Below, in pieces: positions 1 through 48,100 of a stretch of DNA of 64,000 bases. The stretch lies in the NCBI GenBank assembly GCA_053919585.1, contig CM132803.1; one strand, written 5' to 3'. The position numbers were made by a program, and so were the translations under genes. Source of the DNA: Euprymna scolopes (Eukaryota). The notes beneath the pieces are model-generated. The model saw nothing but the letters and a program-made list of their open reading frames with translations, was not told where the DNA came from and did not search any database. The number at the start of each line of letters is the position of its first letter. Position 1 is the stretch's first letter.

Positions 1-1367
1 CGGAGGAGATATTTTGATTGTTTTTGGAGGTTTTCTGGTACATACCTGAGATAATTCCGACTCATATTTCGCGGCTATCACCCATACCCCATCTGTTATC
101 CTAATAGCTTTTGATAGCATTATATTTAGAAGGACTATTATTGACAATGCTGCCCTATTCCCTTTCTATTATCCTTGAATAATTCCATTACACATGAATG
201 GTGATTGCTGAGTGTATATATCAGGCTATTAGACACGCAGCTTCCGAGCTTCGGGAGAGGTAAGCAACATGAACTTTCCTCTCGTTTGGTCAAGAGCAAT
301 ATTTTCAGATTCTATTTTGCACTTTGCGACAGTTCCCAATCCCTGTTTCTCATATGGATAGGGAATCGGTAAATTAATAACTTGAAAGACTTCATATATG
401 CTACTGGAATCTAACGACGGAAGCGACACCACAATCAGCAATCTACCGTCTTCGATGAGAGTTAGACAACCCAATGACTTATAATAATGCCACAGCTCAG
501 CTGTGGGATCTGCTGACAAACTTAGGTGATGGGGTAGTTTGGCCTGAACTTCCAGTATGTGGTCTTTTAATGCGGAAGGTTCCACTATATTTGGAGACAA
601 ATGACCCAAAGCTAGCATATCTAACTGGACTTGCAAATTTCGTATAGAGCCTAACAATGCGTGCAACTTTTTCTGCAATTGTTTGATGATTGTTAAAAAA
701 ACGAAGCTATTTCCTTATGCAATCTTCCAGTTTTATCACTCGGATTGTTAATTCTCCAGTGACATTTCTAATCACCACTTGCATTTTCTTAAATCCCTCC
801 ACTAACTCATTTATTTTGCGACGGTTATCGGCTAGTTCTACTCTGGTTATATTTAGAATAGTAATACTATCCTTCTCTACCTGAGCCAATTCCATCTGAC
901 CTCTTTCAGAAGCCTTTAATCTTTTCTTTAGGTCATCTAATTCCTCCTCTGTTATAGTCCCCAAAAGTATGTTTAACGCTTTCCCCATTATGAGAAGTAC
1001 TGATGTCTTTTCCCTATTTTGTAATAGTGTTAATTCATCCAAATATTTTTCTATAACCTCCACACTAGTTTTTATAATCTGTATGTCCTGCAAAAGTGGG
1101 CACCACAGATTTAAAACCTTTACCTTTTTCATTAGCTATGCAATCCTTTGCCAAACTCTTTCCTACTAAGGTGACCTCGTCTATTTCTTTTTTCAACTTA
1201 TTTGGTGAGGAATGATAGTGTTTGAAGTTCATCGTAAAAACTATTAGCCATTTTGACCTTGTAATTGTCATCTCACTTGTTTTGCGGAAAATTACATTCT
1301 GACTATGTCGCATGGATGCTACTGTTGTCAGCATGCTCAGCAGGAGTAGAGACTTCAATTCAGCCAT
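1..1367 (-). pseudogene. env: Envelope (baculovirus F-like class I fusion protein) gene of an env-bearing Gypsy element, frameshifted, runs off window
   Basis: Consecutive minus ORFs 1065-1367, 707-1132 and 229-678: signal peptide MAELKSLLLLSMLTTVAS; NVIFRKTSEMTITRSKWLIVF; degenerate furin site REKT followed by fusion-peptide-like SVLLIMGKALNILLGTITEEEL; heptad region; GHLSPNIVEP...LWHYYK motif. Confidence 0.75.
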
Positions 1368-1400
1368 CCTACAAGAGAATAGGGGGTTAAATTCAGTCGG
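1368..1400 (-). promoter_or_regulatory. Splice acceptor immediately upstream of env ATG
   Basis: Minus strand reads CTGAATTTAACCCCCTATTCTCTTGTAG|G ATG GCT: branch-like site, pyrimidine tract and AG one base before the start codon. Confidence 0.6.
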
Positions 1401-2841: not shown

Positions 2842-3956
2842 TTAAATTTCTGACAGACTAGCGTTTTCTAGAATGCAGAAACATAGTTCACCTTTATTGT
2901 TCTTTAGCGAGATTTTCGTATTGCCTCTTTTCAAAACGCTATCATTTACTCGACTCCCGTCAGCTAGTTCTACAAAATGATTTTGTGGCTTAAAGTTGGG
3001 GTCAAAATTGATAAAATCAAATTCCTTTGTAATCACATATGCCGTGGCCCTACAATCGACAAGAAAATTATTATTGTTTGTTGAAGCATTAAACGTACAC
3101 AAAAAAAAATACATGTTCGCTAACAGAGCTCTCTACATTTTTAATGGAGTCGCCATTTTGAGTCCTGTATCTACATTGGAAACTCTTGTGATTAGGTCGT
3201 CCACAATTATAGCAAATAATTTTTGTACTTTTCTTAGGAGAAAAATTGTTTTTGGCAAAGTTGCGGTTTTTATTTCTGGCATGGGTATAATTTAATTTTG
3301 GTGTTTTTATGTGTGTATTTTTAAATTTCATGATATTTGTGGATTCGTTTTTTTCTGTGATCATTTTTGTGTGATCGTTTTTTTCTGTGATCATTTTTTC
3401 AGTTTCTTCATAACTTCTGAGTGCTACCTTGAATTGGCTAAAAGTCAGGGGTTTTTCTTTCTGGGTTATAAATGGCTTGGTGATAAATGGCTTGAAATCA
3501 CTCAGTAATCCTTTAAGGACCATGGAAAGTAACAGGCTGTCACTTATAACTTCACCAGACATTTTTAAAGAATTTGCAGTCGTTTCGGCTCTTATAATAT
3601 AATCAGTAATAGTTTCGGCTTCCATTCGTTTTAGAGAGGTCAGTTCAGTGTATAAAGAAATAATTTTGGGTTTTTCTTTCAATAAATAGTGCTCTCTCAA
3701 TATGTTTAATGCTTTGCAGCCATCGTCCAGGGCTTCTCTCATTACCAGTGATAAACTTCGGTCATCTAAACATTGTATTAATTCCGCAAAGACAGTTGCG
3801 TTCTTTTCAATGAAGTCGGGGTCGTTTCTGTTTTGAGGTTGTGTTTGAAGTACTTTGTATCTTTTGGATTCGTAGATATCCTAGAAATTTAACTTGCCAC
3901 AATTTGAATTTTGATTCGGATCCATCGAAATAAAGATGCACGCTGGGCCCATAACC
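2842..3956 (-). mobile_element. Copia LTR retrotransposon 5' fragment (PBS, gag, zinc knuckle, protease)
   Basis: Gag KALNILREHY...KIISLYTELTSLK...TDYIIRAE; CCHC knuckle CYNCGRPNHKSFQC; protease FLVDCRATAYV; PBS GGTTATGGGCCCAG (+ ctgggcccataacc, 3943-3956), the internal tRNA-iMet half-molecule PBS of copia. Confidence 0.9.
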
Positions 3957-3984
3957 TCTAGAAGTGTAAGCCATGTTTAGTTTC

Positions 3985-4657: not shown

Positions 4658-5442
4658 TGTAGTGGATATATTATATATATCCCCGAGTCGTAAAAAACAT
4701 GAAAAATGAATTGTTTTGAGAAAGAGACGAACGTTTTAAATTGAATTAAATGAACTAAAATTTATTTCGTGAAGAAACACAGGAAAGAATAGGGTACAGC
4801 ACACATTTAGTTTGGCGTGCATCTCTGGTTGTTTACTTGTGAGAAGGAAAGTCTATTGTTTGGCATGTGTCTCTCGCTGGTGAGAGGGAAAGTCTATAGT
4901 TTAGCATGCATCTCTTGCTGTTAGCTGGTAAGAGGGAAAGTCTATTGTTGTAGAGAGAGAGAGAATCAATCCAGGCGATGGAGATAGAAAATGTGTAAGG
5001 TGTACGTACTGTCTGTTAACTCTTGCCCCCACACATATAGTAACAGGGGATGTGACGTGTGCGCGTGCCACGAAAGGGACAAATGGTTTGTCGACCACTC
5101 AGCTCAGAAGGCGAGTCGAAAAAGGGTAGGAAACAGCTTGTCTCTTGCTTTTATAGTTGTTTCCGGTGGTCTTTTGCGCATGTGTGGATTTCCTTCAAAG
5201 GGGAAGTAACGTTGCCCATGTGTGCACGTATGTGTGCATACATGTGTGTATGTTAGCGTGTGTGTGTATACACATGAATGTGAGTGTATGTACGCGAACA
5301 TGAATATATGTACGTGTGTGTATGTGTGCGCGTATGTGTATAACAAGAAAAGTGGTTTGAAATGCGAATGCATGTTTTTGTGTGAGACTAGGTAAGGCTC
5401 CCAAAATACTCCCCTTCCCAGGGAAAAAAAATATGCAGTGTA

Positions 5443-5480
<38 letters not shown>

Positions 5481-5516
5481 GTAAGTAATGTTTTCGGCAG
5501 TTGTCTTTTCGTCCTG

Positions 5517-5547
<31 letters not shown>

Positions 5548-7246
5548 GTGTGGTTGTTTAAACAACGTCAAAAACGGAATCTGTTCATAAAAAAGTATTT
5601 ACTTACGCGTGGAAAAGGCGCGTACTCTTTCTTTTTAGGCTGACATTTGTTTTGTTTGTTTTTTTGTTGTGTGCTGACATGTGCAACGAGTTGCTTGGAC
5701 AGTGAAGTGAATTGTTCATTTAGAAGGAAAATTTTTTGTTTCGTGTTGACATCGTGTCTCAAGTTGACGGTGTCTTCGCAAATGAGTCTGCGGTAGTGTG
5801 TGTGTAAATTTTCTGTACGGGCGTTTATTGTGCATTCGTTTGTGTTGAATGAGTTTCCAGTTGCCGGTGTCAATGAAACTTCCAGTTGTGAGTTTATCTG
5901 TGTGCGTGGTGCATCTCAACTCATTGTTAATTCAGCTTCTTCCTATGTGTTGATAGTGATGTCCTGTAATTGTTTCTTTGTTGTTGCGTCTGCTGAATGG
6001 GAGAGAATGTGCATAGGCCTATGTGATTTTGCTCCTCGCGTTTGTTGCAGGGTAATGTTAGGAAACCGTGAAAAATGTTTGCCCAGCTCGAATTTTTTAA
6101 AAATTCGGTATGAAGTCGACAGCTCCGTGTTTATTTTTCTGCCGAGTCTGACAAGGAGTTTCGTCATTGTAGTTCGTTGAGGTTCTTGTCAGTAGTAGGT
6201 CACTTGTTTTTCTTTGTTGAAATGTTCGGGGGTTTTTTGTTTATCAAACAAAACGCGCGTCTTGCTCAAAACAATCAATTTCAAAAAGATAGGGTCACCA
6301 TGCATGTTTGTTTCACATCAGTCAGTCACCAGTTTGTTGCAGGACTTGTGGATTAGAAGGAAATGCGTGTTCATCTAACGTTCGGGTGTCACCAATTTGT
6401 TGTGGTCTGGTGGTATAGAAGGAAATGCATGTTCCTCTCGCGTTCGGGTGTCACCAATTTGTGGTGGACTGGTGTAGGGTATAGAAGGAAATGCATGTTC
6501 ATCTCACGTCAGGTCACCAATTTGTTTTGGACTGGTGGATATATTATATATATCCCCCAGTCGTACAAAATATGAAAAATAAATTGAATTGAGAAAGGAA
6601 AAATGAATTGTTTTGAGGAAGAGACGAACAACGTGTTAAATTGAATTAAACGAACTAGAATTTATTTCGTGAAGAAACACATGAAAGAAAAGGGTACATC
6701 ACGCGTTTAGTTTGGCATGCGTCTCTCGTTGTTTACTTGTGAGAACGAAAGTCTATTGTTTGGCATGCGTCTCTCGCTGTTAGCTGGTGAGAGGGAAAGT
6801 CTATTTTTGTAGAGAGAGAGAGAGAATCAATCCAGGCGATGGAGATAGAAAACGTGTAAGGTGTACGTACTGTCTGTTATTTCTTGCCCCCACACATACA
6901 GTAACTGGGGACGTGACGTGCGCCCCAAAAGGGGCGAATGGTTCGTCGACCACTCAGCTCGGAAGGCGAGTTGAAAAAGGGTAGGAAACAGCTTGTCTCT
7001 TGCTTTTATAGTTGTTTCCGGTGGTCTTTTGCACATGTGTGGATTTCCTTCAAAGGGGAAGTGACGTTGCCCATGTGTGCGTACATGTGTGTATGTTAGC
7101 GTGTGTGTATACACGTGAATGTGAGTGTATGTACACGAACGTGAATATATGTATGTGTATGTATGTGTGCGCGTATGTATATGACAAGAAAAATGGTTTG
7201 AAATGCGAACGCGTGTTTTTGTGTGAGACAAGGTAAGGCTCCCACA
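4658..7246 (-). mobile_element. Non-autonomous LTR retrotransposon (~2.6 kb, LARD/TRIM-like), ~730-750-bp LTRs, non-coding interior
   Basis: Direct repeats 4658-5405 and ~6523-7246; TG...CA outer ends; 4-bp TSD CATT (4654-4657 and 7247-7250); PPT GGGAAGGGGAG on minus at ~5408-5419; tRNA-Trp-like PBS TGGTGACCTGACGTGA at ~6504-6519. Confidence 0.85.
6291..6535 (-). repeat. Tandem array of ~62-bp units, each carrying a PBS-like TGGTGAC and LTR-end-like bases
   Basis: tcacca ends at 6300, 6331, 6394, 6456 and 6519 (62-63-bp period for the last four); shared core tagaaggaaatgc(a/g)tgttc. Confidence 0.8.
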
Positions 7247-9459: not shown

Positions 9460-10070
9460 ACACTTAACTATAAGTGTCATACATAGACTCTAGCTGTTTT
9501 TTTCTGAGAATCTCTCTTTGTAGAAGCACAAGGGTTACATTTAACAAGAGCCGCATAAAGTGTGCCCGAGAGATGATGGTATCGATATCCAAGCACTTTT
9601 TCTCAACATTACCATGATTACTCATTTTCTTTTGAACCCTTACATGGTCCGTATTGCAAGACTGCCTGAAGTAATCATTCCTGACAGAGAGCATGCAACC
9701 CACACAGTTCCTCTGGATTATCACTTAACATGACAAGATTATCCATGTAAACCGATTCTCCATCATATATCTACAATTATGCATGGGATATTGAGCAGCA
9801 TGGTATCGGAGAACATAATTTAAAGGGGCTAAAAGCAAAACCCCAAAATGATGTTGTATCTAAAACAGCGTAGGTGACCTCCATCTTTTAAGAAAAAACA
9901 AAATCGGTTCTTATTCTAGCTTCAGACCAATAATCAAGAAGGCCTTCTTGATGTCTGCCAATACAACATGATTATTTGTGCGAAAGATGAGCAGTAAACC
10001 CAAAAGATCACTCGTGAGATCCACTTCATGGTAGGTTGTTTAAGATATTTCATCTCCCCTGTTTTTTGCT
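9460..10070 (-). mobile_element. BEL/Pao reverse transcriptase fragment, degraded
   Basis: Minus translation DLLGLLLIFRTNNHVVLADIKKAFLII...RFCFFLKDGGHLRCFRY...SPF...YMDNLV. Confidence 0.8.
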
Positions 10071-10561
10071 CCATGACAGTGGCAAAATAAGACAAATACA
10101 ACAAAAGCCTACCTTAAATTCAATAAAAATTTTATTAGTTTCTCGGTTGCAAAAAGGAATGCCCGTTTTGCCTCTGTAGAAAGAGCTGCTAATAACCATG
10201 AAAGGTGATAGTCTTTATCTTCAACAGGAACTAGATGCAGGTTCATCTGCCTTCACAGATTTGAGTTTACAGCTGTTGAAGGGGGCCATTATGATGCCTT
10301 CTGATGAAAAGATACAATTATTGCCTTGAGACGATATTACAGAAGTTCATAATTAATGTTCATTGAAGGAAAGGTCCTTCTGGGAGACGCATAATAATAA
10401 TTGAGCCTAATTATTTAGGCTTAAAATTGAAGTCTCAAAGAGACGAAGGTTGAAGACTCCAAAAATGCCTCCTATGTGGTGGGTGAGTTCCAATTGATAC
10501 TTCTTGAACGGCTATCTTGGTCGGAACTGAAAAAAAAAGGCATGCATGTGTTATATTCGTG

Positions 10562-11176
10562 TGTTACGGACGAATATGCGTATGGTTGCAAAACATAAGA
10601 TGAAATTAAGTAAATTAATATATATTTATTTACCACAAGAAGTTGAGAAGATTAATATAAGTGTTTATTACCGCAACACATGAGATACTGTTGGCATCCG
10701 TTAATAGTCAGCTAGCGGCGAGAGCAGGGTCTGGTGATGGCTCATCCGTTAAGGACGTCGTTGTTGATAATGTCAGGTATAGGAGTGGCTCGTCTGGTCG
10801 TAACGTCGTGAATATGATACGTAGTACGGTAAATATGGGGTACTCACGAGACACTTAATTAACGGACGTTTGTTTGGTAGTAGTCATCTCGCAGCTCCCT
10901 TTCAGTCATCCACGTGTTGCCCCTTCCTTTTTTTTTCTCCTTCCTCTACCGGAAGTCCCCCCGAAAAAACTGCCCCGCAGATGACCAAAGAAAATCCCTT
11001 TCCTCTCCGCACTTGAGACGACAACAACTTCCGTCTCTCGCAATCACGGCAAGATCTCATCTTGTAACACATGCAAAAAGCCCGCCAAGGCAAACCACCC
11101 CGTAGTAAATACACCAATCTGATTGGTTCAAAACAAATACAATGGGAGGCATGATGTAATTGTCAAATTTCTAACA
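10562..11176. mobile_element. Candidate solo LTR
   Basis: TGTTA...TAACA ends, minus-strand AATAAA motifs, GC-richer U3-like part; no clean TSD. Confidence 0.4.
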
Positions 11177-11782
11177 GTTGCTTCATTAAGAAAAGGAGAG
11201 TCCCCAATCTTGAGACTGCAGTTGAGCACTGGCTGAGTTTTAGAAGTAGGGTTTAATTTCAAGACAGGTCTGTGTGGAATCCAAATGAATTTCTTAAATC
11301 ATTGGAGGCTCAAAAATCTATTCTATTATTTCCTGACGTTCCTGCTGAAGAAAAACTTGCAAGTATTCCTGACAAAGTTGCTTCTTCAACTTTTGCACTA
11401 CATGTTTCAATATGCACAAGGCCACCACATGGTTATCAGGTACATGAGATATTTTGCCATCCTTCCAGAGTAACTGCACATCGTATTTGTTATCTTCGAA
11501 TGAGACTGCTTGTTGAAAGAGAGCAATCTTCTTTTTGTCATAGTCGGTCACTTCTTGTTTCTTCACACTAAGCACGTTCTCAAACCTCCTTTGCACGTCA
11601 CTGTCCAGGAAAAAATCACTTAGAGGATTCTTATACGTGCTCTGAGACTCAAGCACAAAACACAGGTGAGAGGGGTTAACTTCAGCAGTTGATGCAAGGA
11701 CCAAATTAAAGACAAGGTACTCCAGTATCTTGTCCAGAGAATGCTCTAAGTAAAGGAACTGCTTCACCTCACCAAAGTGAAC
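11177..11782 (-). mobile_element. BEL/Pao pol fragment (region just upstream of RT)
   Basis: FEDNKYDVQLLWK...NHVVALCIL...EYLQVFLQQERQEIIE...WIPHRPVLK...PVLNCSLK..SPFLNEA. Confidence 0.8.
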
Positions 11783-14700: not shown

Positions 14701-15175
14701 CGTGATTTTTTGGGTTTATAATTTCCACAGTTTCAACATTTAATTTCTGATTTAGCAGCATGTAGGTTTATTTGATTAAAATCCAACTCCGATGTCTCTT
14801 CCTTCCCGAGGGCTGCAGCGGTTGGTTCTCGGTATTGTGCTGGTGAATACGATTCCATATTCCTCGTAGCATTGTCCAGCGCTTGGGCCTGGTCGTCCAG
14901 GTCGAGCGTTTTATTTTCCAACAAATGCTGGCAAATGGTATGGGACTGAATTCCGGCAATAAAGGCACCCCGAATCGATTCATTAGTGTATATCGCCGCA
15001 CTGACGTCCCTAAAATTGCAGTCTTTGCTAAGGACTCGTAATGCCCAAAGATATTCATCCAGACTTTCTCCCGGTTGCTGATGCCTCGTGGTGAGTAGGT
15101 GCCATGCGTATATCTCATTTTTTGGTTTGATAAAGAGTCCCTCCAGTTTGAGACAGGCTTCTTCATAATTTTTTA
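11783..15175 (-). mobile_element. Gypsy LTR retrotransposon, 5'-truncated and degraded (gag-PR-RT-RH-IN-PPT-3'LTR)
   Basis: 3' LTR 11783-11975 with TGTTGTA...TACAACA ends; PPT TTGAGGGGAGAA (11976-11987); RT RMVIDYSETVNKYTSLDAYPL, IDLKNAYHQI; RH LITDQKSV; IN HPGITRM...CIVC, LDFKGPLP. Confidence 0.9.
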
Positions 15176-15815: not shown

Positions 15816-16549
15816 TGCTGTAAATGTTTCCTGATCAAGCAAACAAGTAGTGTCAAGTGTTACATGAGAACAAGAAAAAAATGTCCACGATGTCTCTTGA
15901 AGTTTTGACACTGACTTAAAAATAAAAAATTATACAAAATAGTGGTAATGAATGTCATGTCAGCAAGGATCACTTCACTGCCCGGTCTATACATGATGTT
16001 GTAGTTGTACCCCTGGATCTTTAGCAGCATGCGCTGTAACCGGTGTGGTACTGAGTACAGTGGCTTGGCGCAGATTGGTACCAGTGGCTTATGGTCCGTG
16101 ATGACAGAAAAGGCTTTTCCTTGAAGGTCTTCGTCGTTCTGGCCAAATACTGCCACATCATCAGCAGTACTGGCCACACCATCTAGACCTTCTAGGATTT
16201 GGTCCATTTTTGCTTGGAAAATATCCTGGGAGATGTTAAGGCCAAATGGTAAGCGTTTCCAGCATACCCCTCCAAAAGGTGTCCTGCAGGTTGTCAAGAG
16301 CTGTGACTCTTCATTCAGGAGTATCGACCAGTATCTAGCCTTGGCATCAAGTTTGCTGAATACTTTGGCTTTTGCAAAAGCTGGGTTCAGTTCCTCCACG
16401 GTGGGTATTTTGTGTGGACACCTCTTGAGACTTGCGTTAAGCTTCTGTGGATCCATGCATATTCAGAGCGACCCATCTTTCTTGGTGCTGTACACGAGGC
16501 TGGAGCACCAATCTGTGTGTTCTTCGACGTTCATGAGCACATCTTCATC

Positions 16550-26078: not shown

Positions 26079-26411
26079 CACCCCTATGGGACAAAAGCAG
26101 GTATGGCCCACTCCAAACCAAATCTGGCAGAACTATAAGAAAACCCTCACGATACAAAGACTGACCCAATTCCACAAACCAATGACATGAACTGTCACAA
26201 AAAAAAACAAAAAAAACACGCACACAAATATACACAATGAACTAAACAGTGGGGGTGATGTTGTAGTAATGGACTAAACCAGTTACCTCCCTGTGTATAG
26301 GCCCGGGTGTAAGCTTAACAGCCTAGCTCTCATGCTAAATGAACATCGATTTACTCGCTCCTCTGTTCGGCTCTATTTCCTATAAATAGCACTCCAATAA
26401 GTAACACTTCA
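26079..26411 (+). mobile_element. Plus-strand 3' end (integrase tail, PPT, LTR) of the same Mag-like family
   Basis: QTKSGRTIRKPSRYKD* tail; PPT-like gtgggggtga; LTR 26259-26411 is the reverse complement of 24373-24403 + 25953-26078. Confidence 0.8.
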
Positions 26412-28033: not shown

Positions 28034-28057
28034 GTCGACATAAGGGCAATCGTATGA

Positions 28058-32170: not shown

Positions 32171-32908
32171 GAAAATATGTGCATTTTGATTGGCTAGAAA
32201 GTCAATAACCTCTTTCATGTGGGGTGTCTTCAGCTACATCCGCCGAAGAATGGGTTTGATTGGGTCAGTGGCTGACGAAATATTTTCGTTTTTTATATGT
32301 TGGCTAGAAGGGTGCATAAAGGTGCATGCGTGAGAGGTGAATTTTACGCGTTGTGTCTAAGGGAGTCGAGATGTCAACATCCAGTTGTGTTGTGTGCTAT
32401 TGTTTTTAGTTGAGTAGCCCACACCATTGTTTGCTAGGGTGACGGTGAGGCTATGATATGGCTCCCTTCTTAGAAAATTGATTGGGAAAATCAATTCAGT
32501 AATAAATATATGTTTTAAAGTTGTCAGGAAACTAAACTATTCTTCCTGATTTGGTGCGGATGATGGGTTTGGGTGCTTCTACACAATGATAAGACAGCAC
32601 ACCATGTTTTATTTGAATACTGGGTCAGCGTTTACTTTCGATGAGAAATATTTTCATCTCAGGGCTCTGACAAATGTCTGTACAGAGAAACTGGAGACTC
32701 CCAAAGATGGTGTCTAGTAGGCATTAAGTTTCTCCCCCTGTCTAGTAGACATTCATGTCTTAACAAATCTAATTTTATTGAAAAAGAAGATTCACATATT
32801 TCACAAATATATGATTTCTCTCTTTAATTTTTTATTTTGTTTTTGTTGGAGCTATGGCAGTCCACCGGATGCCAGTCATTTACCTGCTATTTCAAACACT
32901 CCAAACGA

Positions 32909-35900: not shown

Positions 35901-36736
35901 CAGTACAATCGCAGCTAGCTGTTCAGTTAGGGACTGGCCACTTGTTAACTGCGAGGTTTTCTCTTCTCTCTCCGACAGAAAACTCAATTATCTACGTGAC
36001 AGGGTCAATCGATGGGGGAATCTTCGTTCGTCGGACCCAAGGAAGCAAAGCTCTCTCTCTATATTTCTAGGCTCTATAGAGGTCGTCTCTCTCGTCTTAA
36101 ACCGTCGCTCAGTGTCGTCCCTATAGTCGTCAGGAACTCTGTCCTCATCTCGCGTTTGACTACCCCCGGGATTCTTTATCTTTTCACCCGTCTCCTTCAT
36201 CCAAACTCGGTCACCCTGTCTTAACTGTCTAGTAAACGCTGCCTTTTTTTTCTTCTTGACCTTCCTGGTCCTATTAGTCCTATCGGCCGTCGCCTTGAGG
36301 ACCGTCCCTGATTCTCGGACTACTGGATCTGTAGGAGTTACTCCCTTCTTATTAACCTTATACATCGCTACCCGTTTGACTTGGGACAATTTTCCTCCCT
36401 GTTCCTTGGTGCTATCCACCTTGCCCATACAGGCCCCGGCCGTTCTTGGGGAAAGCTTCCTGTTGCTGTCAGCTCCCATAGGGAGAGGGACAGACCTTGT
36501 GTCACCTAGTGGTATCTTCACCCCTCTCACCGTTAGCGCGTCTGGATTAAAACTCAGAGTGGCTCCCCTCGCTCGGAGCCAATCCTCTCCCAGAATTATT
36601 TCGTTGCATAGCCCGGGTACCACATACAGGGGGAAATTCTCTTTCTTTCCGGCCACTCGTACGGGTAGCCATACCTTCCCTGTCACCGACATCCAGCTAC
36701 CGTCGGCCTGACTGAGCCCCACATCCAACAGGTACA
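32909..36736 (-). mobile_element. Non-autonomous Gypsy (gag-PR only) with ~1.0-kb LTRs that overlap its coding region
   Basis: Direct repeats 32909-33915 and 35719-36736 (~98-99% identical); TG...CA; TSD ACGA (32905-32908, 36737-36740); PBS-like TGGTGCCGACGACC (35701-35714); purine tract GGCAGGGAGGAGAAGG abutting the 3' LTR. Confidence 0.9.
33419..35086 (-). CDS. Gag-protease polyprotein (555-aa open frame; true start probably ~35178 before a 1-nt frameshift)
   Basis: Two CCHC knuckles (CWNCGGEGHRSREC, CWRCGDLRHIRRDC); aspartic protease ALVDTGA...IILGEDWL; no RT, RH or IN core. Confidence 0.8.
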   Translation of the reverse strand: MGNQRTRIGGDPRGVKEWLAIIEKKRLVYGLTDREMVLLACDGAVAAASEYICKCLESNPGIAWSDFRDQVKRKFVGEKTTVQAVRELSRIEMADGEDVDRLVDRMQELAVLAYPVTEHRDMPTTQAMLVDTMVDAVRDEATKIEVLKSCPDTLEEARKIAKNYAWLQKRIMGEESRNRSGELGNRMRYGAGGLARGQPGLVCWNCGGEGHRSRECPTVHEKTPRQNGRVRVGIVKTELNACQRGGKIDHFSYSHQSHRCWRCGDLRHIRRDCPDRGKSHLRAKDPLERGNQNQTPPPRRICREREVGQTGRVGKKPLSQVAMLTGAGYQERTLKQEKRRAQVSPPLTKKGELTCNVTIGAMQVKALVDTGAIISLIDADVCRTVAGRRRLYPSDVGLSQADGSWMSVTGKVWLPVRVAGKKENFPLYVVPGLCNEIILGEDWLRARGATLSFNPDALTVRGVKIPLGDTRSVPLPMGADSNRKLSPRTVGACMGKVDSTKEQGGKLSQVKRVATYKVNKKEVTPTDPVVRESGTVLKATADRTNRTRRKKGSVY

Positions 36737-36789
36737 ACGAGAGATCAATTTAAGATTTTAACAGTCTGTTTAAGTGCAATTGTTTGTAT

Positions 36790-37560: not shown

Positions 37561-37689
37561 TAGCTAAAAAATTCAAAATATATACAATGTAGAAGCGCTA
37601 CTGAATAGGGTTTAGGTGTAAATATGGAGGTAAGGGTTTAAGAGATATTTAAATTTCTGATGTGTGTCAACTGGTTTTGTTGCATATCT

Positions 37690-38760
37690 TATTTCATTCT
37701 TGGTTTGGGACGGTTCGTTTTTTGGGCAGTTACAGTGTTTTTGTAGGAGGCAAAATCCAATTCCAGATTTTGGCCAATCAGTTTCCAAGCATGTGGCTTT
37801 AACCAGATCAAAGATGCGGATACCATGTTCAATTTCAGTAACAATCGATGACTTGGAGTCCTCATTCCACTTGAATTGGGTGGTCGGTTCAAGAAGCTCC
37901 CTGAATGGTAACATGCTATCTGTCATGTTGAAGGCATAAGACACTTGGTTCGTGAGACTGAACCATGAACAAACATTGGTGATGTTTTTCGGCATCGGGA
38001 AATCCTGTAAATACTTCCTACATGGGCAGACACTGTTTTTGATGTTGAATCCAGCAAATCCAACGATGTCTGCTCCAAGAATAAATTTATCTGAGTTAAG
38101 TGTGATGCCGTTTCTTCCACAGATGTCAAGCCAGTTTATTGTCTGAAAAAAGCTTTCTACCAAATTTTCGGCCCATAACAAAGCATCATCAATGCACTTT
38201 GTCTTCCATGGTATGTCCACGACAATCTCATCATAGCGTCGTGTGTATCCATCGCTGGAGGCAATGTAGCCCTGTGGTGCAATAGCGACCTCAAGGGGTG
38301 ATAAATGTGGTAAAATGGCGATCTTCCTTACAGAGGGGTACACTGTGGTAACCATATCACGCATCAAAGACAGTCTTCTTTTTACCTGACTGAATGTGCA
38401 GGAATGACGATGGTATGTGATTGGTTTCATGAATTGCAAAAGCATTTAGGGCTTAAAGATTGACTGTGTGTCTTGGTTGGCCATTTTTCTTTGTACAGGT
38501 CATCATTTTATGACACTTGGTGACAGGTTCGCCAATTGGTGACAGGTTCAGTGACTTCCAAATTGCACATCTCCAGCAACTCCTTTTTTGACTTCCTCCC
38601 GCCAATGTATGAGAATCGATAAAGGCATATGATGAGCTAGAGGCTCAGCATCGGGGTCCACCACGCAACTCAGCTTTAGCAATGGGGAGTCCATCATAGG
38701 TAATATTTGATGTTCAGATGTGTTAAATGTGCACCATATAGATGAAGAAGAAACTACTGA
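37690..38760 (-). mobile_element. Gypsy RT/RNase H fragment
   Basis: APQGYIASSDGYTRRYDEI..KCIDDALLW; CGRNGITLNSDKF; LETDWPKSGIGFCLLQKHC. Confidence 0.85.
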
Positions 38761-39900: not shown

Positions 39901-40367
39901 TTGTGTAGAATTCAGTCTAAATCTGACTTTTATATTTGACAAATTGATATTGCCACAGCTTCTTATCCACATGAATTTGAAAGCCGATTTTTATTGCTCA
40001 TTCTATTTTCTTTCACTATCTTATGAATTCTTCACATGTGTAGAATAGTTATGCATTTTTGTAAGCCATTTTTTCTGTTTGCATCCTGATTTTGCTCTTT
40101 TATTTGGATTCTTTTGGCAAGTGCTTCACTTCAAGTTCCTTTACTATGCTTTAAAGCCCCTTTTTACGCCATTTTAAAATCAGCCTGCAAATGATGTCCT
40201 TCAGCCACCCATGCACTGTAAGGATGATAAGAAATTGTTTGATCTGAGACAATTTGTTTCTACCAAGGTTCAGTTTATTTCAAAGCTTTCATGTCCAATG
40301 TCTTGTTTTGCGCACTGGAATCCCATTGCTTTTAGAATTAAGAAACTGATTTTTCTGAGGATGTAGA

Positions 40368-43300
40368 TATAATGTCGGGGGTTCCCATCTCGCGGGTATC
40401 AAACAATACGAAAGAATAACAACGCAGGCATTAACATGTTAACAACAGCTCGGTCGCAGTCAGACTGACGGCCAAAACATAATTTATTGAAGAGCGCACA
40501 TAACTAAGGGTAGATAACTCCTAGAGTTATGTCCCTTGATTGGGGACATCACATCCCTCCCCATCTTGGTGGGACAACTTGTCTTATTTTAATTTTTTTT
40601 TTTTTTATTACTAATTTTTTTATTTTTATTATTTCTTTTTATTTATTTATTTATCTTACATTATGAAGTCTTTGAATCTTGCGGGGGGCAGTCTTTTCCT
40701 AGATGGATTTCGTCTCGGTAACTGATCAGCTATTTGTGTTTCGAGTATTTCCTGGTCTTCTGAGGTGTGTGGATTGTACTCACTTTCCCAGTCGGAATCA
40801 GAGTCAGGGTTTTCATTCCTAGGTGTTATGCGTTTTAGCAAAGAAGAGTTTCTAGTCATTTTGTGATTTCCTCTCTGCACCGTTATCATACTTCCCTTCA
40901 TTTTTGTAATGGTATATGGTTTAGGATTGTATGGTGTTGACAGTTTGTTTTGTCTCTTCTGTCTGATCAAAACCATATCACCCAGGCTGAGATTTGTTGT
41001 TTTTGCCTTTCTATCAGCGTACCCCTTCATCTTGTCTTTTCCTTTGGAGTCATTTTCTTTTATTCTTTTATGTATCGGCCCTGTTACTGGGCTTTCGATA
41101 CCATTTGGTATGCCGATGTTCAGTTTTCGGCCCGTACAAGCTTCAAATGGTGATATTTAGTGGTGGTATGGGGGGTGGCTCTATATTGCCTTAGGAAATG
41201 TGGTAACTGGGTCTTCCAGTTGTGGCCTTCCACCGTGGCTGCAAGAATGTATTTTTTTAAGGTGCGCATAAAATGCTCTACTTCACCATTTGCCTCCGGC
41301 CATAGAAGTGTAATGCGTCTATGTTTGAAACCTGCTTGTGCCGCTAAGTCTTTAAAGTCTTGTCCTTGAAATGGTGGACCGTTATCAGATTTTAGAATGG
41401 TTGGATATCCTTGTCTAGCAAAGATCATGTTTAAACGGGGAATAACTGTACATGCAGCTATTGAGGGTATTACCTCCACCTCAGGGAATCGGCTGTAATC
41501 GTCGATTATGACTAACACATAGTCACCTGATGGGAACGGCCCTGCAAAATCGACTGAGATTTCAGTCCATGGTGCAACTGGTAGTGGTGAGGAGTGTATG
41601 GGTTCACGGCTCATGTGCCTTGGGTCTGAGGCTTGGCAGGGAATGCATCCGTATATTGTTTCCTCCACCAGTCTATCGATTCCTGGGAACCATACTTTTT
41701 CCCTTATCAGTTGTTTGGTTTTGACCATGCCCTGGTGAGATTGATGAGCTAAATCGACGGATCTCTTCCTCAATTTTGAGGGAATTACAAGCCGGTGTCC
41801 TTGAAGGACGAGACCATTGTGTGTTGAAATTTCATCCTTGAATAGGGAAAAACTTGACAGCTGGGGGTCATTCCATCGTCCATCTTTAACAGCACCCTTG
41901 ACCTTTTGTAACTGGGGGTTCTGTTCTGTGGCTTGTTTGACTTCTTCAAGAGTTAAAGATTTTGGTATTGTATTCTTAGCTATATACCTTATGTAGGCTT
42001 CTGCTACATTGTCTTTAGATGTTGTGTTGTGAGTGACGACTCAGATAGTCCGCAGGGTTTTGGTCATCTTTCCCGGGACGTTATACCAGGTTGTACTGGT
42101 AGGGCATGAGACGAAGATGCCAGCGTTCAATTCTTGTTGTTGTCGGTTTGAGACTTTTCACAATCCCAAGAAGAGGTCGATGGTCGGTGGTGATTTTGAA
42201 TCTCGCCCCATATAAGTAGAGATGAAAATGTTCAGCTGCATATACCACGGCTAACATCTCTCTCTCAGTTTGAGAGTATCGTTTTTCTACATCTGTGAGG
42301 GCACGACTGGCATAACATAGCACCCTCCCATCTTGTGTCAGAACTGTACCTAACCCAACTGGGCTTGCATCTACCAGGATGTCGGTGTCTTTCTTCGGGT
42401 CGAAATACGCCATCACCTCAGCTCCAGTCAAAGCTTCCTTTAACTTGTCTGCAGGTGCTTCTTCTTCCTCTGTCCATCTCCAATTAGCATCTTTTTTGTG
42501 AGCCGTCTCAGTGGTTCCTAATAGTGGCATAATGTGGAATAAATCGAGCCACATACTGTGTCATGCCCAAGAATGATCTGACTTCACTGATGTTCCTTGG
42601 AGATTTGCATTTTGTAATAGCAGAGATTTTCTCTGGGTCAGGGGACACTCCATTCTCACTGAAAATGTGTCCGAAGAAAGTCAGTTTCCGTACAGAAAAA
42701 AGGCATTTTTCTTTGTTCAGCTTGGCTCCTACTTCTTGTAGACGTTTCAGGGTGTTCCTCAAGCTGATGTCATGAGATGACTGGTCACGTGCATATATTA
42801 TTATGTCGTCTGATAAGTTTTTCACTCCAGGGATGTCTCCGAGGAGGTCTGATATAGCTTTTTGAAATAGTTCAGAGGCTGCATTCACACCAAAACTTAG
42901 TCGCTTGTAACGAAATAAACCTGTATGCGTGGCAAATGTCGTTATATATCTGCTGGGCTCTTCCAGTTCTAGTTGATGATACGCATTGGAAAGGTCTAGT
43001 TTGCTGAAAACTGTACACCCATTTAAGTCTGCTATTAAGTCGTCTACGGTTGGCATTGGATGTTTAATCTGTTGAATGGCTTCATTTGCCTTTCTCATGT
43101 CGACGCAAATTTGTACGCTACCATTTTTCTTGGGAACTACGACAATCGGTATAACCCATGGGGTAGGTCCCGTGACTTCCTCAATCACATCCATTTCTGT
43201 GAGACGTTTGAGTTCTGTCTTCACATCTTTTCTCACATGGAAAGGTATCCTGCGGTGTCGCTGAGTTACGGGGAAAACCGATGAGTCAATGTGGAGCTTA

Positions 43301-45142
43301 ATGGTAACTCCAGAAATTTTTCCCATCTTTCCATCAAACAGTGCATGGAACTCGTCTTGAATTGGGACCGTCACATGGAACGTGAAGTTAAACGTTATCA
43401 TTCCCAATGCTTCAGCAGAATTACCGCTCAAGAGGTTCTGCAGTCCAACTAAAGGATTTTCGCTGTCGACCACAAATATTTTAGCCTTACAGGATTTATC
43501 ACGAAATTTTATGCTCGCATTGATAAATCCTCGGATGGGTATGGCATGTTTCGACCTGTACGCAAATATCCGGGTCGTTGTTTTGTTTATACATGGTTTG
43601 TGTTTTAAACCATCATATATGTGTCCAGCAATTATGTTTACGCTAGCACCCGTGTCTACCACAAACATTACAGGGGAATTATTTACAAGGGCGGTAACTT
43701 TTGGTGTCTTATTTGACGGTGTTAATTTCATCGAGTATACAGACTTGTCACTGGACGTAGAGGGAGATATTGGATTATTGACAAGGGTGGTAGCTCTTGG
43801 TGTCTTAATTGACGGTGTAAATTTTACCGAGTAAATAGATTCGTCACTGGACGTAGAGGGAGATATCGGAGGAGGATTGGTGAAATGAATTACTCTTACC
43901 GGCTTTGCTTTGCATGCTCTTGCAAAGTGGTTTTTCTTGTGGCAATTCATGCATTCTTTTCCTCGGGCTGGACAAGTCAAGTGTGTAGCAGAATATCCAC
44001 AATAGTGACATGTTTGCTGTCCGCCATCTTTTTTTTTGTCCACCTCGTGGTCTGTTCTTCGAGGTGTCATGGCGACTATTTTGCCGCGCTGTCCGCCATC
44101 TTTTTTTTGTCCACCTCGTGGTGTGTTCTTCGAGGTGTCATGGCGACTATTTTGCCATGAGTGTCCACAACAACTGTCTTTACTGTCGTTGACGTTGAAA
44201 TTTTCATTATTTCTACGTGTGAGATGCGTGCGGTTCTCGTTGCTGTAAAGAGCATGTAATTCATTTCGTTCCATGTCTGCAGCACGCGTATCAGCCAGCA
44301 CTATTGCCCTAGCTTCGTCCAGGACTTGTTTCAGCGTAGAGTTGTCTCTTAGCGCCTTCCTTCTGACTATAGAGGATGTGAACCCCTGCAAAATTTGGGC
44401 TAGGATCTCTCTGTCTTTATCTTCAAACTCGCACGTGGTAGCTAGAGTCCGTAATCGTGCATGGTACTGGTCTAAACTTTCGTCCATGTTTTGCATAGCC
44501 CGTCGAAATTTGAAAAGTTCATATGACGTGTTTTTCTGTGGCGTGAAATGATCCGTGATTTCTTCATCGTTTCATACTCGCCCGAAACTATATTTGCCGT
44601 CGTCCAAAATGTTTGTTGCGCCTATGCCCTTTTGCTGGTCCGTGAATAAAATGGAAAATATCAAACACTTCGTCTCCTGCATAGTGAAGAAGTGTTGCTT
44701 TCTTCTTTTTGTCGTCGCAAATGTCCATAGCAACAAATTTTCTAACCTGTCTATCCATTTTTTCCAGCGAACGGTAGTCGTGTTTTGGTCCGCATGTACG
44801 CTGAAACTTGGAAAAACTGGTAATCCACCGCTGGCCATTTTTTTTTTTTTTTTTTTTTTTTGTATTAATTCCGGAAAAAAAAAAAAATAAAGATTTTTTT
44901 TATATTAAATTCCGAAATGTAGCGTGAGCTCGTCACAAAAAATTCTCGTCGCCAGATATAATGTTGGGGGCTCCCGTCCCACGGGTATCAAACAATACGA
45001 AAGAATAACAACGCAGATATTAACATGTTAACAACAGCTCGGTCGTAGTCAGACTGACGGCCAAAACATAATTTATTGAAAAGCGCACATAACTAAGGGT
45101 AGATAACTCCTAGAGTTGTGTCCCTTGATTGGGGACATCACA
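40368..45142 (-). mobile_element. Full-length Mag-like Gypsy LTR retrotransposon
   Basis: 186-bp LTRs 40368-40553 and 44957-45142 (~10 differences); 5-bp TSD GTAGA; PBS TGGCGACGAG (tRNA-Ser GCT type); PPT 40554-40565; gag-PR-RT, RH (42081-42554), IN (41120-41773, 40656-41030). Confidence 0.95.
42508..44496 (-). CDS. Gag-PR-RT open frame (662 aa) of the 40368-45142 element
   Basis: CHYCG...CMNCHKKNHFARAC; FVVDTGASVN; ICVDMRKAN, KLDLSNAYHQL, LSDDIII. Confidence 0.85.
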   Translation of the reverse strand: MQNMDESLDQYHARLRTLATTCEFEDKDREILAQILQGFTSSIVRRKALRDNSTLKQVLDEARAIVLADTRAADMERNELHALYSNENRTHLTRRNNENFNVNDSKDSCCGHSWQNSRHDTSKNTPRGGQKKDGGQRGKIVAMTPRRTDHEVDKKKDGGQQTCHYCGYSATHLTCPARGKECMNCHKKNHFARACKAKPVRVIHFTNPPPISPSTSSDESIYSVKFTPSIKTPRATTLVNNPISPSTSSDKSVYSMKLTPSNKTPKVTALVNNSPVMFVVDTGASVNIIAGHIYDGLKHKPCINKTTTRIFAYRSKHAIPIRGFINASIKFRDKSCKAKIFVVDSENPLVGLQNLLSGNSAEALGMITFNFTFHVTVPIQDEFHALFDGKMGKISGVTIKLHIDSSVFPVTQRHRRIPFHVRKDVKTELKRLTEMDVIEEVTGPTPWVIPIVVVPKKNGSVQICVDMRKANEAIQQIKHPMPTVDDLIADLNGCTVFSKLDLSNAYHQLELEEPSRYITTFATHTGLFRYKRLSFGVNAASELFQKAISDLLGDIPGVKNLSDDIIIYARDQSSHDISLRNTLKRLQEVGAKLNKEKCLFSVRKLTFFGHIFSENGVSPDPEKISAITKCKSPRNISEVRSFLGMTQYVARFIPHYATIRNH

Positions 45143-48100
45143 GTAGAGTCCTGCAGCATATGTAATTTAATTCATCTCCATGAGGGATGTATTGGATATG
45201 ATGAGTGTTTGAATAGTAATGTTAACTTTTTATTACTGCCTTCGTAGCTCTTGTAACTTGGGCTTTCCTCCAGCCTCATTTTCTAAACCTGCTCAATGAT
45301 GTTATTAAATTCTTTCTTCAAGGCCAGCTGTTCATAATTTGGCTCTGGGAATTCTTCAGCTAATGGTTGTGGTGCTGATAGTAGTCTCCTTGCTGATAGT
45401 GATGAGGAAGAACTTTGGTTCAGTGGGGAGGTGTATGTCTTTAGTTTGTACATAGCTGATGGTGATGGAGATCCTGGTGGTGAAGTGGATCTATAGTGAG
45501 GTGTCTTTGGCATAGGCAGTTCGGATGGATCCACAGCTGAATTGTGGTCTGGGTCTTACTGTATGTAGGGTGTGTTGATCAGTGATGGCAATTGGGGAAA
45601 TTGTGATAGGGCTTTGTAGTGGATTTTCTTGTTCTCTTGGAGGATTCTGTTTTTCTCCAGAGTGCATGTGCCTTGCCAATTGTTAGGAACGGGCAATTTA
45701 ATGGCTACCTCCATAGGGGGGGGGGGTTAACGCCGGTTAATCATAATAACTTTTAAAATTTTCGAGTACTTTTTTATTGTATTTGAAAGATTATAGTTTA
45801 AAGTTAATTTCTCAAAGAAAAAAAGTGTGTGAAATAAAAAATACATGGAATAATTTTATCTCAAATCTGAAAAACCCTACATTTCATGTAAAAATTCATT
45901 ATGACAAAAATAACGTTTACATTTTCTGTCAAGGAAAATATAAGTTTTCTGGAATTATTTCCAAGTTAAGTATTAAGTTAAAGTCTTAAAATAATGAATT
46001 AATACAATAAATGTACTTAACTTTTGCTAAAAAAATAATAATTATCCAAAAATGTATCACTGGTAGAAACGAGACTTGTGTATCGTATCCAAAAAAACTC
46101 TGGCGGCAATATTCAAATATGTATGGAAGGACAAATTAGACATAATTTATGTCTTTATTTAACATTCTTCTGGCATACCGAGCGACATTTTTTGGAGCTG
46201 CAGACTCTCCTTCCTTCATTTAAAAATGCAGAAAAGTTAATTAAATTAATTAATTATACTACTGACAATTCTTTGAAAAAGAAAAGATAGAACCATTATT
46301 TATTAATATTAATACAGAATTACAATGGTTAAGAAAACAATTTATAATCATTGAAAAAATTATACACTAACAAAATACAGACTTACGCTAAAATTTATCA
46401 TAATGTTTACGTGAAATTTAAAGTTGATGAACACAAACAGGCGGGTAGTTGAAAAGAGGAGGAGGAGGAGGGTGGGCAAAACAGATTGGTTTTCTTTTCA
46501 ACTTTGCGCATCCATACTTACCGACATGGAACGTTCGTATAATTTTTGCCATTTTTTAAGTAAATTATTTTTCTATGTTCCTGTTTTTTGATTTAATTTT
46601 TTTTTACTTTATTTTCCAAGATTATATGAACATTATTTTATGTTGATAATTATACGTCCTTGCGTGCAATGAACATATTAGAATCTTACATGTAAAGATT
46701 ACGTTAAAAATGTAAACATAAAAAAAAGTAGAAATAATTTTTGCAATTATAATTTTTTTGTGTGAAAATATTAAATAAACAATGCTTAATTCAATGATAA
46801 TATTGGTAGTTCAAGAAATTAATTTTTCTTTGAGTTATATCGATTTCATTAATACAGATTTCAGGGGGGGGGCGTAATGTTCCTGTAAAAATTATTTTAT
46901 TTTTATTTTATTGTTACAAATTACGATGCTTTATTTACATAAAAAAAGCAAAAATAAATTATTGCGTTTTTTATTTACTACTGAAAACCATAACTTTAGA
47001 AAAGGTATTTTTTGTTTAAACAAAATAATACATTTTCACTAAGATTCAAAAAAAAATAATTAGTTCATTATATTCCGCGATCATTATTTGATAAATACTG
47101 AAAATTTCATTAAAATTGGTTAATTTCCTGATTTTTTGGTGAATTTTTAAGTAAGGGGAGGGGGTCAAAATGTTTATACATTTTGAGCATCGGCATTCAT
47201 TTTGCCCGTACCTACCAATTGTGATTTTGTTGAAAAAAAAATGGAAAATGAACATACTTCACAAATATATGGATTCTTTCCATAACAAAATGGTTTTACA
47301 CGTGAAAAAAAAAAGACACAAGAATATGATTCTGTGAAGGTGTCCCATGATTTAATTTTGAACATTAGTCGGCTGGGCGATAACCTGTTAAACATGTAAA
47401 ACGTATGTGGCGGTCAGTAAAAGAAGAAAGGTCCAGACGCGGAGATAGATTATCAACGTCTTTATGAATTCTCGTTTTATTTACATTGGGTGAGAATTTT
47501 TATTTTTTAAAGGGAGGCAACTGCCACTGGTACAGAATATCTGCTAATATAATATAAGCACTCTAATATTATATATGTTTTTCTTATTTATTCAACATAA
47601 ATATTTTTTTTTAATTATAAAATGTTTGGGTCATTTTCTTTGCACTTAAACCTGACAAAATCTGAAGACGAATGGAAAGATATTTACTTACCTTTTTGAA
47701 AGAAATTAATTTGGTTTTATCGGTTCTTAATATGCTGAAATCCGAGAATTAGGAAGGAATAAAAGCACATTAAATTGAATTCTCTTTCATTGTATCAAAT
47801 TGAAACATTTGTGATGAAATATTTTTTTTAAATATGAACTTGAAATGAGTGCAATGCAAACAATTTCTGTACTAATTGGACTTTATGCATTTCTTTTGTA
47901 TTATTTGTTTTCTTTGCAAAAGTTAAATTGATTTAAAAAAAAAAAAAAAAACTCTTTCTCTCAAATAATGAAATTCTGTGACAACTGTGCAGGTGTATTT
48001 TTCACATATCCATAACTGGTAATTACCCATTGAGTTTTTTTTTAATTATTATTATTTTGTGAAATCAAATATGTAAATCTGTGAAATAAAATTGTAAGAA

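What the first reader, a model, noticed from the sequence alone, without database searches (positions are those of the whole stretch)
1..45700. Strand-polarised TE stack: candidate flamenco-like uni-strand piRNA cluster
Seen: of ~21 orientable insertions, all but one 330-bp fragment (26079-26411) lie on the minus strand. They include many unrelated families (Gypsy clades, two Copia types, BEL/Pao, CR1, R4-like, and a Tc1 whose insertion orientation should be random). Under random orientation, 1 or fewer of 21 has a two-sided probability of about 2e-5, although nested pieces are not fully independent. The youngest insertions (near-identical LTRs) follow the same bias, so selection appears ongoing. 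Established: Drosophila flamenco is a uni-strand cluster of antisense, LTR-dominated fragments including env-bearing gypsy elements. Inference: this is a plus-strand-transcribed piRNA precursor locus or TE trap in another invertebrate, with its promoter left of the window.
Basis: partly seen in the sequence, partly recalled or inferred. Interest (0 to 1): 0.85.

Follow-up and report, generated by a model that had tools for sequence, protein, structure and literature searches.

The report
One-strand transposon stack, possible piRNA source
About 45 kb of this invertebrate genome is a pile of unrelated transposons that all point the same way, as in loci that make transposon-silencing small RNAs, but sequence alone cannot separate that from a long intron or an insertion bias.

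Summary
The polarity is real. With Pfam and natural relatives I could orient 13 insertions in 1-45.7 kb (12 if a nested LINE arrived inside its host), and all lie on the minus strand. They comprise seven Gypsy-type elements, an LTR element of unknown family, an env-like fragment, a Copia-type gag, an APE-type LINE piece, a Tc1 transposon and a non-autonomous gag-protease LTR element.

No plus-strand piece gave a transposon hit.

I could not reproduce the count of 21, the second Copia type, BEL/Pao or R4. The two-sided p is therefore about 2.4e-4 to 1e-3, not 2e-5.

The stack ends sharply near 45.7 kb. The next retroelement to the right lies on the plus strand.

Three integration chemistries and a range of insertion ages share the bias. 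This favours orientation-dependent survival inside a long plus-strand transcription unit.

- A uni-strand piRNA precursor locus is my leading reading (about 0.4).
- An intron of a plus-strand gene comes next (about 0.25).
- Same-orientation nesting bias plus chance is equally likely (about 0.25).

No tool here measures transcription or small RNAs. If it is a piRNA locus, it is a new member of a known kind. Interest is moderate.

The parts
232..714 (-). env-like fragment (Baculovirus F protein family), left edge of the window
   Evidence: Pfam PF12259, E 8.2e-07, 28.4 bits against a cut-off of 24.1
3092..3880 (-). Copia-type gag fragment with zinc knuckle; no pol found next to it
   Evidence: Pfam Retrotran_gag_2 at 4.8e-10 and zf-CCHC; neighbouring pieces gave no hit
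4662..7244 (.). Element X: pair of about 740-bp direct repeats (82% alike) flanked on both sides by the same 9-mer. Old LTR-like element; orientation only weakly indicated (a pyrimidine tract beside the left repeat would fit minus). Not counted.
   Evidence: no Pfam hit for its pieces
9832..11890 (-). Element I: LTR-type element of unknown family, oriented through its colinear homologue on the plus strand at 51191-51829
   Evidence: four colinear protein matches, plus to minus. The weak CFAP300 Pfam hit is below the cut-off and was dismissed
12199..15173 (-). Gypsy A: decayed pol (protease to integrase). 4-6 stops and 1-2 frame changes against three relatives. Same family as E.
15860..16549 (-). 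Gypsy B, 3' piece (RT-RNase H), cut off from its 5' piece by the insertion of C
   Evidence: Pfam RVT_1 and RT_RNaseH; the query spans are colinear with 22681-24105
16550..22680 (-). Gypsy C: complete LTR element nested in B. LTRs 207 bp, 98% alike; target-site duplication CATC; primer-binding and polypurine tracts give minus.
18454..22326 (-). pol of Gypsy C (protease-RT-RNase H-integrase): 6 in-frame stops, no frame change
17164..18408 (-). 5'-truncated LINE reverse-transcriptase fragment lying inside C between its integrase and its 3' LTR. Full-length relatives carry an AP-endonuclease plus RT.
   Evidence: Pfam RVT_1; representative search; Pfam on relatives; phmmer 1.3e-98
22681..24105 (-). 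Gypsy B, 5' piece (gag-like and the start of pol)
24402..25952 (-). Tc1-type DNA transposon, 1.55 kb, 29-nt terminal inverted repeats. The HTH and DDE domains are in minus order; the transposase is broken.
   Evidence: Pfam DDE_3 and HTH_Tnp_Tc3_2; inverted repeats
24373..26411 (.). Foldback/MITE-like host of the Tc1 copy (arms about 144 nt, about 490 bp without the Tc1). Symmetric, so it has no orientation.
26714..28057 (-). Element D: Gypsy-type integrase fragment (zinc-binding and core domains), separate from E
   Evidence: Pfam
29858..31991 (-). Gypsy E: decayed pol (protease to integrase). 2-12 stops and up to 2 frame changes depending on the relative used. Same family as A.
32908..36738 (-). 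Element F: non-autonomous LTR element. LTRs about 1 kb, 97.6% alike; target-site duplication ACGA; primer-binding and polypurine tracts give minus. One intact gag-protease frame (33422-35113).
37615..38545 (-). Element G: weak Gypsy-type pol fragment
   Evidence: tblastn 4e-11; phmmer 6e-08. No Pfam hit
40367..45142 (-). Gypsy H: complete LTR element. LTRs about 187 bp, 94.7% alike; target-site duplication GTAG.
40662..44847 (-). gag-pol of Gypsy H: 2-3 stops and 2 frame changes
45701..48300 (.). Right edge of the stack: AT-rich stretch (GC 0.26) with no coding signal
51191..53593 (+). Old LTR retroelement on the opposite strand, outside the stack. Gag-like part homologous to element I, plus an integrase zinc-binding domain. 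Positive AT skew over about 48-55 kb.
62257..63106 (-). Second LINE RT fragment, outside the stack, 54% identical in protein to the one inside C

Best explanation
Region 1-45.7 kb is a nested pile of at least 13 independent transposon insertions, all with their sense strand on the minus strand. It continues off the left end of the window.

Most likely it lies inside a long plus-strand Pol II transcription unit that serves as a uni-strand piRNA precursor, a 'transposon trap'. The plus-strand transcript would be antisense to every trapped element and would be cut into antisense piRNAs.

Under this model insertions land in either orientation. Sense insertions are lost because they carry polyadenylation and splice signals into the precursor. 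Antisense insertions are tolerated or favoured. The unit would end near 45.7 kb.

Shown: the polarity, the nesting, the in-situ insertions with target-site duplications, the range of ages, the three integration chemistries, and the sharp right edge.

Inferred: the transcription, its direction, and the piRNA output.
For: - All 13 orientable insertions are on minus and none on plus. Two-sided p is 2.4e-4.
- Integrase-driven LTR elements, a target-primed LINE and a DDE transposon share the orientation. One insertion mechanism cannot explain that; survival after insertion can.
- The bias holds from old decayed elements (A, E, B) to young ones with 98%, 97.6% and 94.7% LTR identity and intact 4-bp target-site duplications.
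- Three successive nestings (B, then C into B, then the LINE into C) keep the same orientation.
- Gypsy-type coding sequence is on one strand only in 8 of the 9 5-kb bins. This is the sequence-only criterion that finds flamenco-like loci in Drosophila (PMC11400887, PMC10643416).
- Mollusc piRNA clusters are enriched in young Gypsy elements (PMC6128900). Unidirectional clusters of up to 60.9 kb are reported in a pearl oyster (PMC6342924).
- The plus strand has 28 AATAAA hexamers against 70 on minus.
- Polarity stops at a sharp compositional edge, and the next retroelement is on plus.
Against: - There are no expression or small-RNA data, and no promoter lies inside the window.
- Only 45.7 kb is visible, against 143-1085 kb for described flamenco-like loci.
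- Only one env-like fragment is present.
- piRNA clusters cover only about 0.3% of a mollusc genome (PMC6128900), so the prior is low.
- At 75-80% antisense, as seen for ERVs in vertebrate introns (PMC1794541), an intron would give 13 of 13 with probability 0.02-0.06.
- A 2-fold same-orientation nesting preference would give 0.008 (PMC2836564).
- With a low prior for clusters, these alternatives weigh about the same.
- In the annelid Capitella no large flamenco-like locus was found (PMC8915122).
- The source species is unknown.
Confidence: 0.4

Rival explanations
1. The region is a long intron, or part of a long non-coding or UTR transcript, of a plus-strand host gene. Sense-oriented retroelements are removed by selection because their polyadenylation and splice signals disrupt the host transcript, so only antisense copies remain. 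There is no dedicated small-RNA role.
For: - The facts that point to a plus-strand transcription unit apply here too: polarity across three integration chemistries and all ages, and fewer AATAAA hexamers on plus.
- Antisense excess of ERVs and LTRs in introns is well documented, at 2-3-fold and 4-fold for one family (PMC1794541).
- Introns make up a large share of such genomes, so the prior is high.
Against: - Pfam scans of 110 stop-free pieces on both strands found no host-gene exon anywhere in 64 kb. The one candidate (CFAP300-like) was below the cut-off and has one uninformative relative. This is a weak test for short exons.
- 13 of 13 is more extreme than reported intronic ratios: 0.024 at 75% antisense.
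- About 70% of the region is transposon sequence, including three complete LTR elements. That is dense for an intron under selection.
Confidence: 0.25
2. The polarity has no transcription-linked function. This is an ordinary heterochromatic transposon pile in which new copies tend to enter older copies in the same orientation, with chance and post-hoc choice of the region's edge doing the rest.
For: - In human intergenic DNA several nesting combinations show about a 2-fold excess of same-orientation insertions, for example ERVL in ERVL 2.0 and L1 in L1 2.2 (PMC2836564, Table 3).
- With a 0.67 chance of copying the orientation, a chain of 12 further insertions has probability 0.008. That is not negligible across thousands of transposon-rich windows in a large genome.
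- Several insertions here are demonstrably nested, and some pairs belong to related families (C in B; A and E).
- The right edge at 45.7 kb was picked after seeing the run. For the whole window the figure is 14 of 15, p 9.8e-4.
Against: - The bias is shared by a DDE transposon, a LINE and LTR elements of unrelated families. A common insertion-site mechanism is not expected across these.
- The Tc1 copy sits in a symmetric foldback that offers no orientation cue.
- Most elements are juxtaposed rather than demonstrably nested.
- In four control loci around relatives of H in other assemblies, neighbours were on both strands: 2 same and 3 opposite. This is a very small sample.
Confidence: 0.25
3. 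The region is transcribed on the minus strand, for example from the AT-rich edge or from element promoters, so the elements lie in sense. Alternatively the polarity reflects some other strand-linked process, such as replication direction.
For: Nothing in the window fixes the direction of any transcript. LTRs of young elements (C, F, H) could act as minus-strand promoters.
Against: - The minus strand carries 70 AATAAA hexamers against 28 on plus, together with the elements' own termination signals. A long minus-strand transcript is the less likely one.
- No known process selects for sense-only stacks.
Confidence: 0.1

Closest known systems
Drosophila flamenco and flam-like unistrand piRNA clusters (PMC10643416; FlaHMM, PMC11400887)
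   Same: The region is LTR/Gypsy-dominated and nearly all insertions lie on one strand. Old fragments and young copies are mixed. An env-type fragment is present. It meets the Gypsy-on-one-strand-per-bin criterion used for sequence-only prediction.
   Different: - Only 45.7 kb is visible, against 227-1085 kb.
- In flies the bias is driven by Gypsy alone; here a Copia gag, a LINE and a Tc1 follow it too.
- The promoter, splicing and somatic expression are unknown.
- The genome is not a fly's: CpG o/e is 0.67 and the elements' relatives are marine invertebrates.
Flamenco-like unidirectional cluster of Aedes aegypti (PMC7161354)
   Same: Elements are arranged on the same coding strand and, in the mosquito, are read as one long antisense transcript that gives phased piRNAs. 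This shows the architecture exists outside Drosophila.
   Different: The mosquito locus is about 143 kb, rich in hybrids of transposons and non-retroviral viral elements, and backed by RNA and small-RNA data. No such data exist here.
Mollusc piRNA clusters (Lymnaea, Crassostrea: PMC6128900; Pinctada: PMC6342924)
   Same: The host group is plausible. These clusters are enriched in young Gypsy elements, unidirectional clusters exist, and sizes reach about 61 kb.
   Different: Those clusters were defined by small-RNA mapping. A complete antisense arrangement of the transposons is not reported as their hallmark in the passages I read.
Antisense-biased ERV/LTR populations in introns (PMC1794541)
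   Same: The proposed cause of polarity is the same: sense copies inside a transcription unit are lost because of their polyadenylation and splice signals.
   Different: The reported bias is 2-4-fold, not complete. No flanking exons were seen here.
Orientation bias of nested transposons in human intergenic DNA (PMC2836564)
   Same: There is a same-orientation excess among nested insertions without any host transcript.
   Different: The excess is about 2-fold and specific to certain pairs. Here the bias is complete and crosses transposon classes.

Membership tests
flamenco-like unistrand piRNA cluster | LTR/Gypsy-rich region with strong one-strand bias of insertions | tested here: met
   13 of 13 orientable insertions are on minus. 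Gypsy-type coding sequence is on minus only in 8 of the 9 5-kb bins.
flamenco-like unistrand piRNA cluster | Size of hundreds of kb (227-1085 kb in Drosophila, about 143 kb in Aedes) | tested here: inconclusive
   45.7 kb is visible. The stack runs off the left end of the window and has a sharp right edge.
flamenco-like unistrand piRNA cluster | Uniquely mapping piRNAs from one strand only, with 1U bias and phasing | not testable with these tools
   No small-RNA data are available, and the source species is unidentified.
flamenco-like unistrand piRNA cluster | Single Pol II promoter upstream and one long continuous precursor transcript | not testable with these tools
   The presumed start lies to the left of the window. 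The promoter scanner on hand covers only bacterial promoters and was not used.
flamenco-like unistrand piRNA cluster | Enrichment of env-carrying Gypsy elements (endogenous retroviruses) | tested here: inconclusive
   One env-like fragment (Baculo_F). No env was found in the other Gypsy elements.
flamenco-like unistrand piRNA cluster | Strand bias carried by Gypsy only, with other classes unbiased (PMC10643416) | tested here: not met
   The Copia gag, LINE and Tc1 copies are also on minus. The numbers are too small to weigh heavily.
intronic antisense transposon accumulation | Flanking exons of a gene on the strand opposite to the elements | tested here: inconclusive
   No host domain was found in 110 scanned pieces. 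Short exons would be missed, and the left flank is outside the window.
nested LTR-retrotransposon pile | Elements interrupted by later elements that carry their own target-site duplications | tested here: met
   C (duplication CATC) splits B. A LINE piece lies inside C. A Tc1 copy splits a foldback element. F and H have 4-bp duplications.

The most novel reading that the evidence does not exclude
A marine invertebrate outside the arthropods, probably a mollusc, has evolved a flamenco-type locus. This would be a long plus-strand precursor in which every trapped element of every class, including a DNA transposon and a LINE, is kept antisense. Complete polarity would then be a convergent, general design of transposon traps rather than a speciality of fly follicle cells.
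Probability: 0.3. Interest if true: 0.6.

Novelty: new member of a known kind. Interest (0 to 1): 0.4.

Why it matters
If the locus makes plus-strand piRNAs, strand polarity alone could flag piRNA source loci in non-model invertebrate genomes that have no small-RNA data, as FlaHMM already does for Drosophila. It would also give a dated record of which transposon families this species has had to silence. If the locus is an intron or a product of nesting bias, it is a useful warning: a run of about a dozen same-strand insertions is not enough evidence on its own.

Tried and rejected
1. A weak CFAP300 Pfam hit at 11321-11890 (minus) looked like a possible host exon or retrocopy. It scored below the cut-off, and the homologue search found only one unnamed 177-aa relative. 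I rejected it; the piece belongs to element I.
2. Attempts to identify the species or the contig all failed.
   - An exact look-up of a window protein returned nothing.
   - An LTR word and a pol query found nothing in metagenome contigs.
   - Named relatives of H pol are molluscs, cnidarians, echinoderms and amphioxus. This fits a marine invertebrate, possibly a bivalve, but with low confidence.
3. The homologue search with the gag-protease of F found nothing. The PDB search with the LINE RT found nothing.
4. Rfam and tRNA scans found nothing.
5. No hits came from Pfam or from relaxed phmmer with the proteins on hand. D is a Gypsy-type integrase by similarity.
6. Control loci around relatives of H in other assemblies had too few neighbouring transposons (5) to estimate a background orientation rate.
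7. Duplication does not explain the polarity. The only near-identical repeats are the LTR pairs, and related elements are 45-70% alike in protein.
Full report
**What the window is.** The window is 64 kb with no N. From 1 to about 45.7 kb GC is 0.36-0.50 and the plus strand is T-rich. From 46 kb GC falls to 0.27-0.35 and the AT skew turns positive over 48-55 kb. CpG o/e is 0.67 in the stack and lower in the older elements, so this genome methylates CpG and is not a fly's. Named relatives of the best-kept pol are molluscs, cnidarians, echinoderms and amphioxus. The top hit is a bacterial-symbiont bin of clams that evidently carries host DNA. The species could not be identified.

**Annotation method.**
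- Pfam gave transposon domains for 18 of 59 minus-strand pieces and 0 of 23 plus-strand pieces within 1-45.7 kb.
- 120 natural Gypsy pol relatives matched only minus-strand intervals by tblastn and by phmmer.
- 150 relatives of the extra RT are AP-endonuclease plus RT LINE proteins. They matched 17164-18408 on minus and a second fragment at 62257-63106 on minus.

**The insertions, left to right.**
- An env-like fragment (Baculo_F) at the left edge.
- A Copia-type gag.
- An old LTR-like pair, X. Its orientation is uncertain and I did not count it.
- Element I, oriented through four colinear protein matches to a plus-strand relative at 51.2-51.8 kb.
- Gypsy A.
- Gypsy B, which is split by Gypsy C. 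C in turn holds the LINE piece.
- A Tc1 copy with both transposase domains in minus order. It sits inside a symmetric foldback element.
- Integrase fragment D.
- Gypsy E, of the same family as A.
- F, a non-autonomous gag-protease LTR element.
- A weak Gypsy fragment G.
- Gypsy H.

C, F and H have 4-bp target-site duplications. C and F also have primer-binding and polypurine tracts that give minus independently of the proteins. That makes 13 orientable insertions, or 12 if the LINE piece arrived inside C, and all are on minus. Together with X and the foldback element they cover about 70% of the region.

- pol of C: 6 in-frame stops and no frame change.
- gag-pol of H: 2-3 stops and 2 frame changes.
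- A: 4-6 stops and 1-2 frame changes.
- E: 2-12 stops and up to 2 frame changes, depending on the relative used.
- B: cut by one insertion and truncated.
- The gag-protease frame of F is intact, but the element has no RT or integrase.

26079-26411 is the right arm of a foldback element of about 490 bp. The Tc1 copy split its left arm. The evidence is a perfect 31-nt inverted repeat plus a 115-nt one. The element is symmetric and cannot be oriented.

**Signals that need no annotation.**
- AT skew is negative in 39 of 45 1-kb bins of the stack, against 7 of 19 to the right.
- No stretch of 2 kb or more in the stack has a clearly positive skew, so a hidden plus-strand retroelement is unlikely.
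- Stop-free pieces of 250 aa or more number 10 on minus and 0 on plus.
- AATAAA occurs 28 times on plus and 70 times on minus.

**Statistics.**
- Two-sided p is 2.4e-4 for 13 of 13, 4.9e-4 for 12 of 12, and 9.8e-4 for 14 of 15 over the whole window.
- The edge was chosen after seeing the run, and the number of windows screened is unknown. In a large transposon-rich genome a few such runs could arise by chance.

**What lies to the right.** An AT-rich stretch without coding signal spans 45.7-48.3 kb. An old LTR element follows on the plus strand (integrase zinc domain at 53294-53593; gag-like part). After it come foldbacks and a Tc1-like element with long inverted repeats, and then a minus-strand LINE piece. 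The polarity is therefore a property of the stack and not of the whole window.

**Interpretation.** Integrase, target-primed reverse transcription and DDE transposition have no shared way of sensing strand. A shared orientation across old and young insertions therefore points to survival after insertion, which is what a long plus-strand transcription unit would impose.
- Two known settings fit: uni-strand piRNA precursor loci (PMC10643416, PMC7161354, PMC6342924) and introns (PMC1794541).
- The region meets the per-bin one-strand Gypsy criterion that predicts flam-like loci from sequence in Drosophila (PMC11400887). Mollusc clusters are enriched in young Gypsy elements (PMC6128900).
- Clusters cover only about 0.3% of such genomes, while introns cover far more.
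- A roughly 2-fold same-orientation excess among nested insertions in human intergenic DNA (PMC2836564) gives a non-functional route with probability near 0.008 for this run.

Weighing priors against likelihoods, I put the piRNA-precursor reading at about 0.4, the intron or host-transcript reading at about 0.25, nesting bias plus chance at about 0.25, and other causes at about 0.1. No tool here can measure transcription or small RNAs.

**Comparison and novelty.** One-strand piRNA source loci are known in flies, mosquitoes and molluscs. If this is one, it is a new member of a known kind. Two features are unusual. The polarity is complete. It also extends to a Copia gag, a LINE and a Tc1 copy, whereas in Drosophila the bias is carried by Gypsy alone (PMC10643416). 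In the annelid Capitella no large flamenco-like locus was seen (PMC8915122), so a confirmed case outside arthropods would be of moderate interest.

Noticed in passing
window 32908-36738: LTR element F has 1-kb LTRs. Its single intact gag-protease frame runs from the internal part into the 3' LTR, so part of the protease domain is LTR sequence. It has no RT or integrase. It is a non-autonomous element whose LTR seems to have grown to take in coding sequence.
   Followed up: partly
window 16550-22680: Gypsy C has LTRs 98% alike, yet its pol carries 6 in-frame stops and no frame change. By my rough estimate that is more stops than the LTR divergence predicts (about 1-2). It was probably already defective when it inserted.
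   Followed up: partly
window 232-714: A Baculovirus-F-type env fragment occurs in a genome whose transposon relatives are marine invertebrates. This env type is best known from insect Gypsy elements.
   Followed up: no
window 59363-59932 and 55973-56186: Two foldback structures, with arms of about 275 nt and about 100 nt. If transcribed they would form long hairpins.
   Followed up: partly
window 60493-62073: A 1.58-kb element with about 220-nt terminal inverted repeats of Tc1-like ends and no recognisable transposase.
   Followed up: partly
window 4662-7244: A pair of about 740-bp direct repeats (82% alike) flanked on both sides by the same 9-mer, with a 62-bp tandem array before the right copy. 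It is probably an old LTR-like element with an unusually long flanking repeat. The family is unknown.
   Followed up: partly
window 45701-48300: A stretch with GC 0.26 and CpG o/e 0.88, higher than in the transposons around it, lies exactly at the edge of the stack. Its nature is unknown.
   Followed up: no
L004 1-23321 (ENA ERZ25066843): A control locus around a relative of H pol holds a LINE, a pogo-type DDE gene, a THAP gene and a RAG1-like gene on mixed strands. This contrasts with the polarity of the window.
   Followed up: partly
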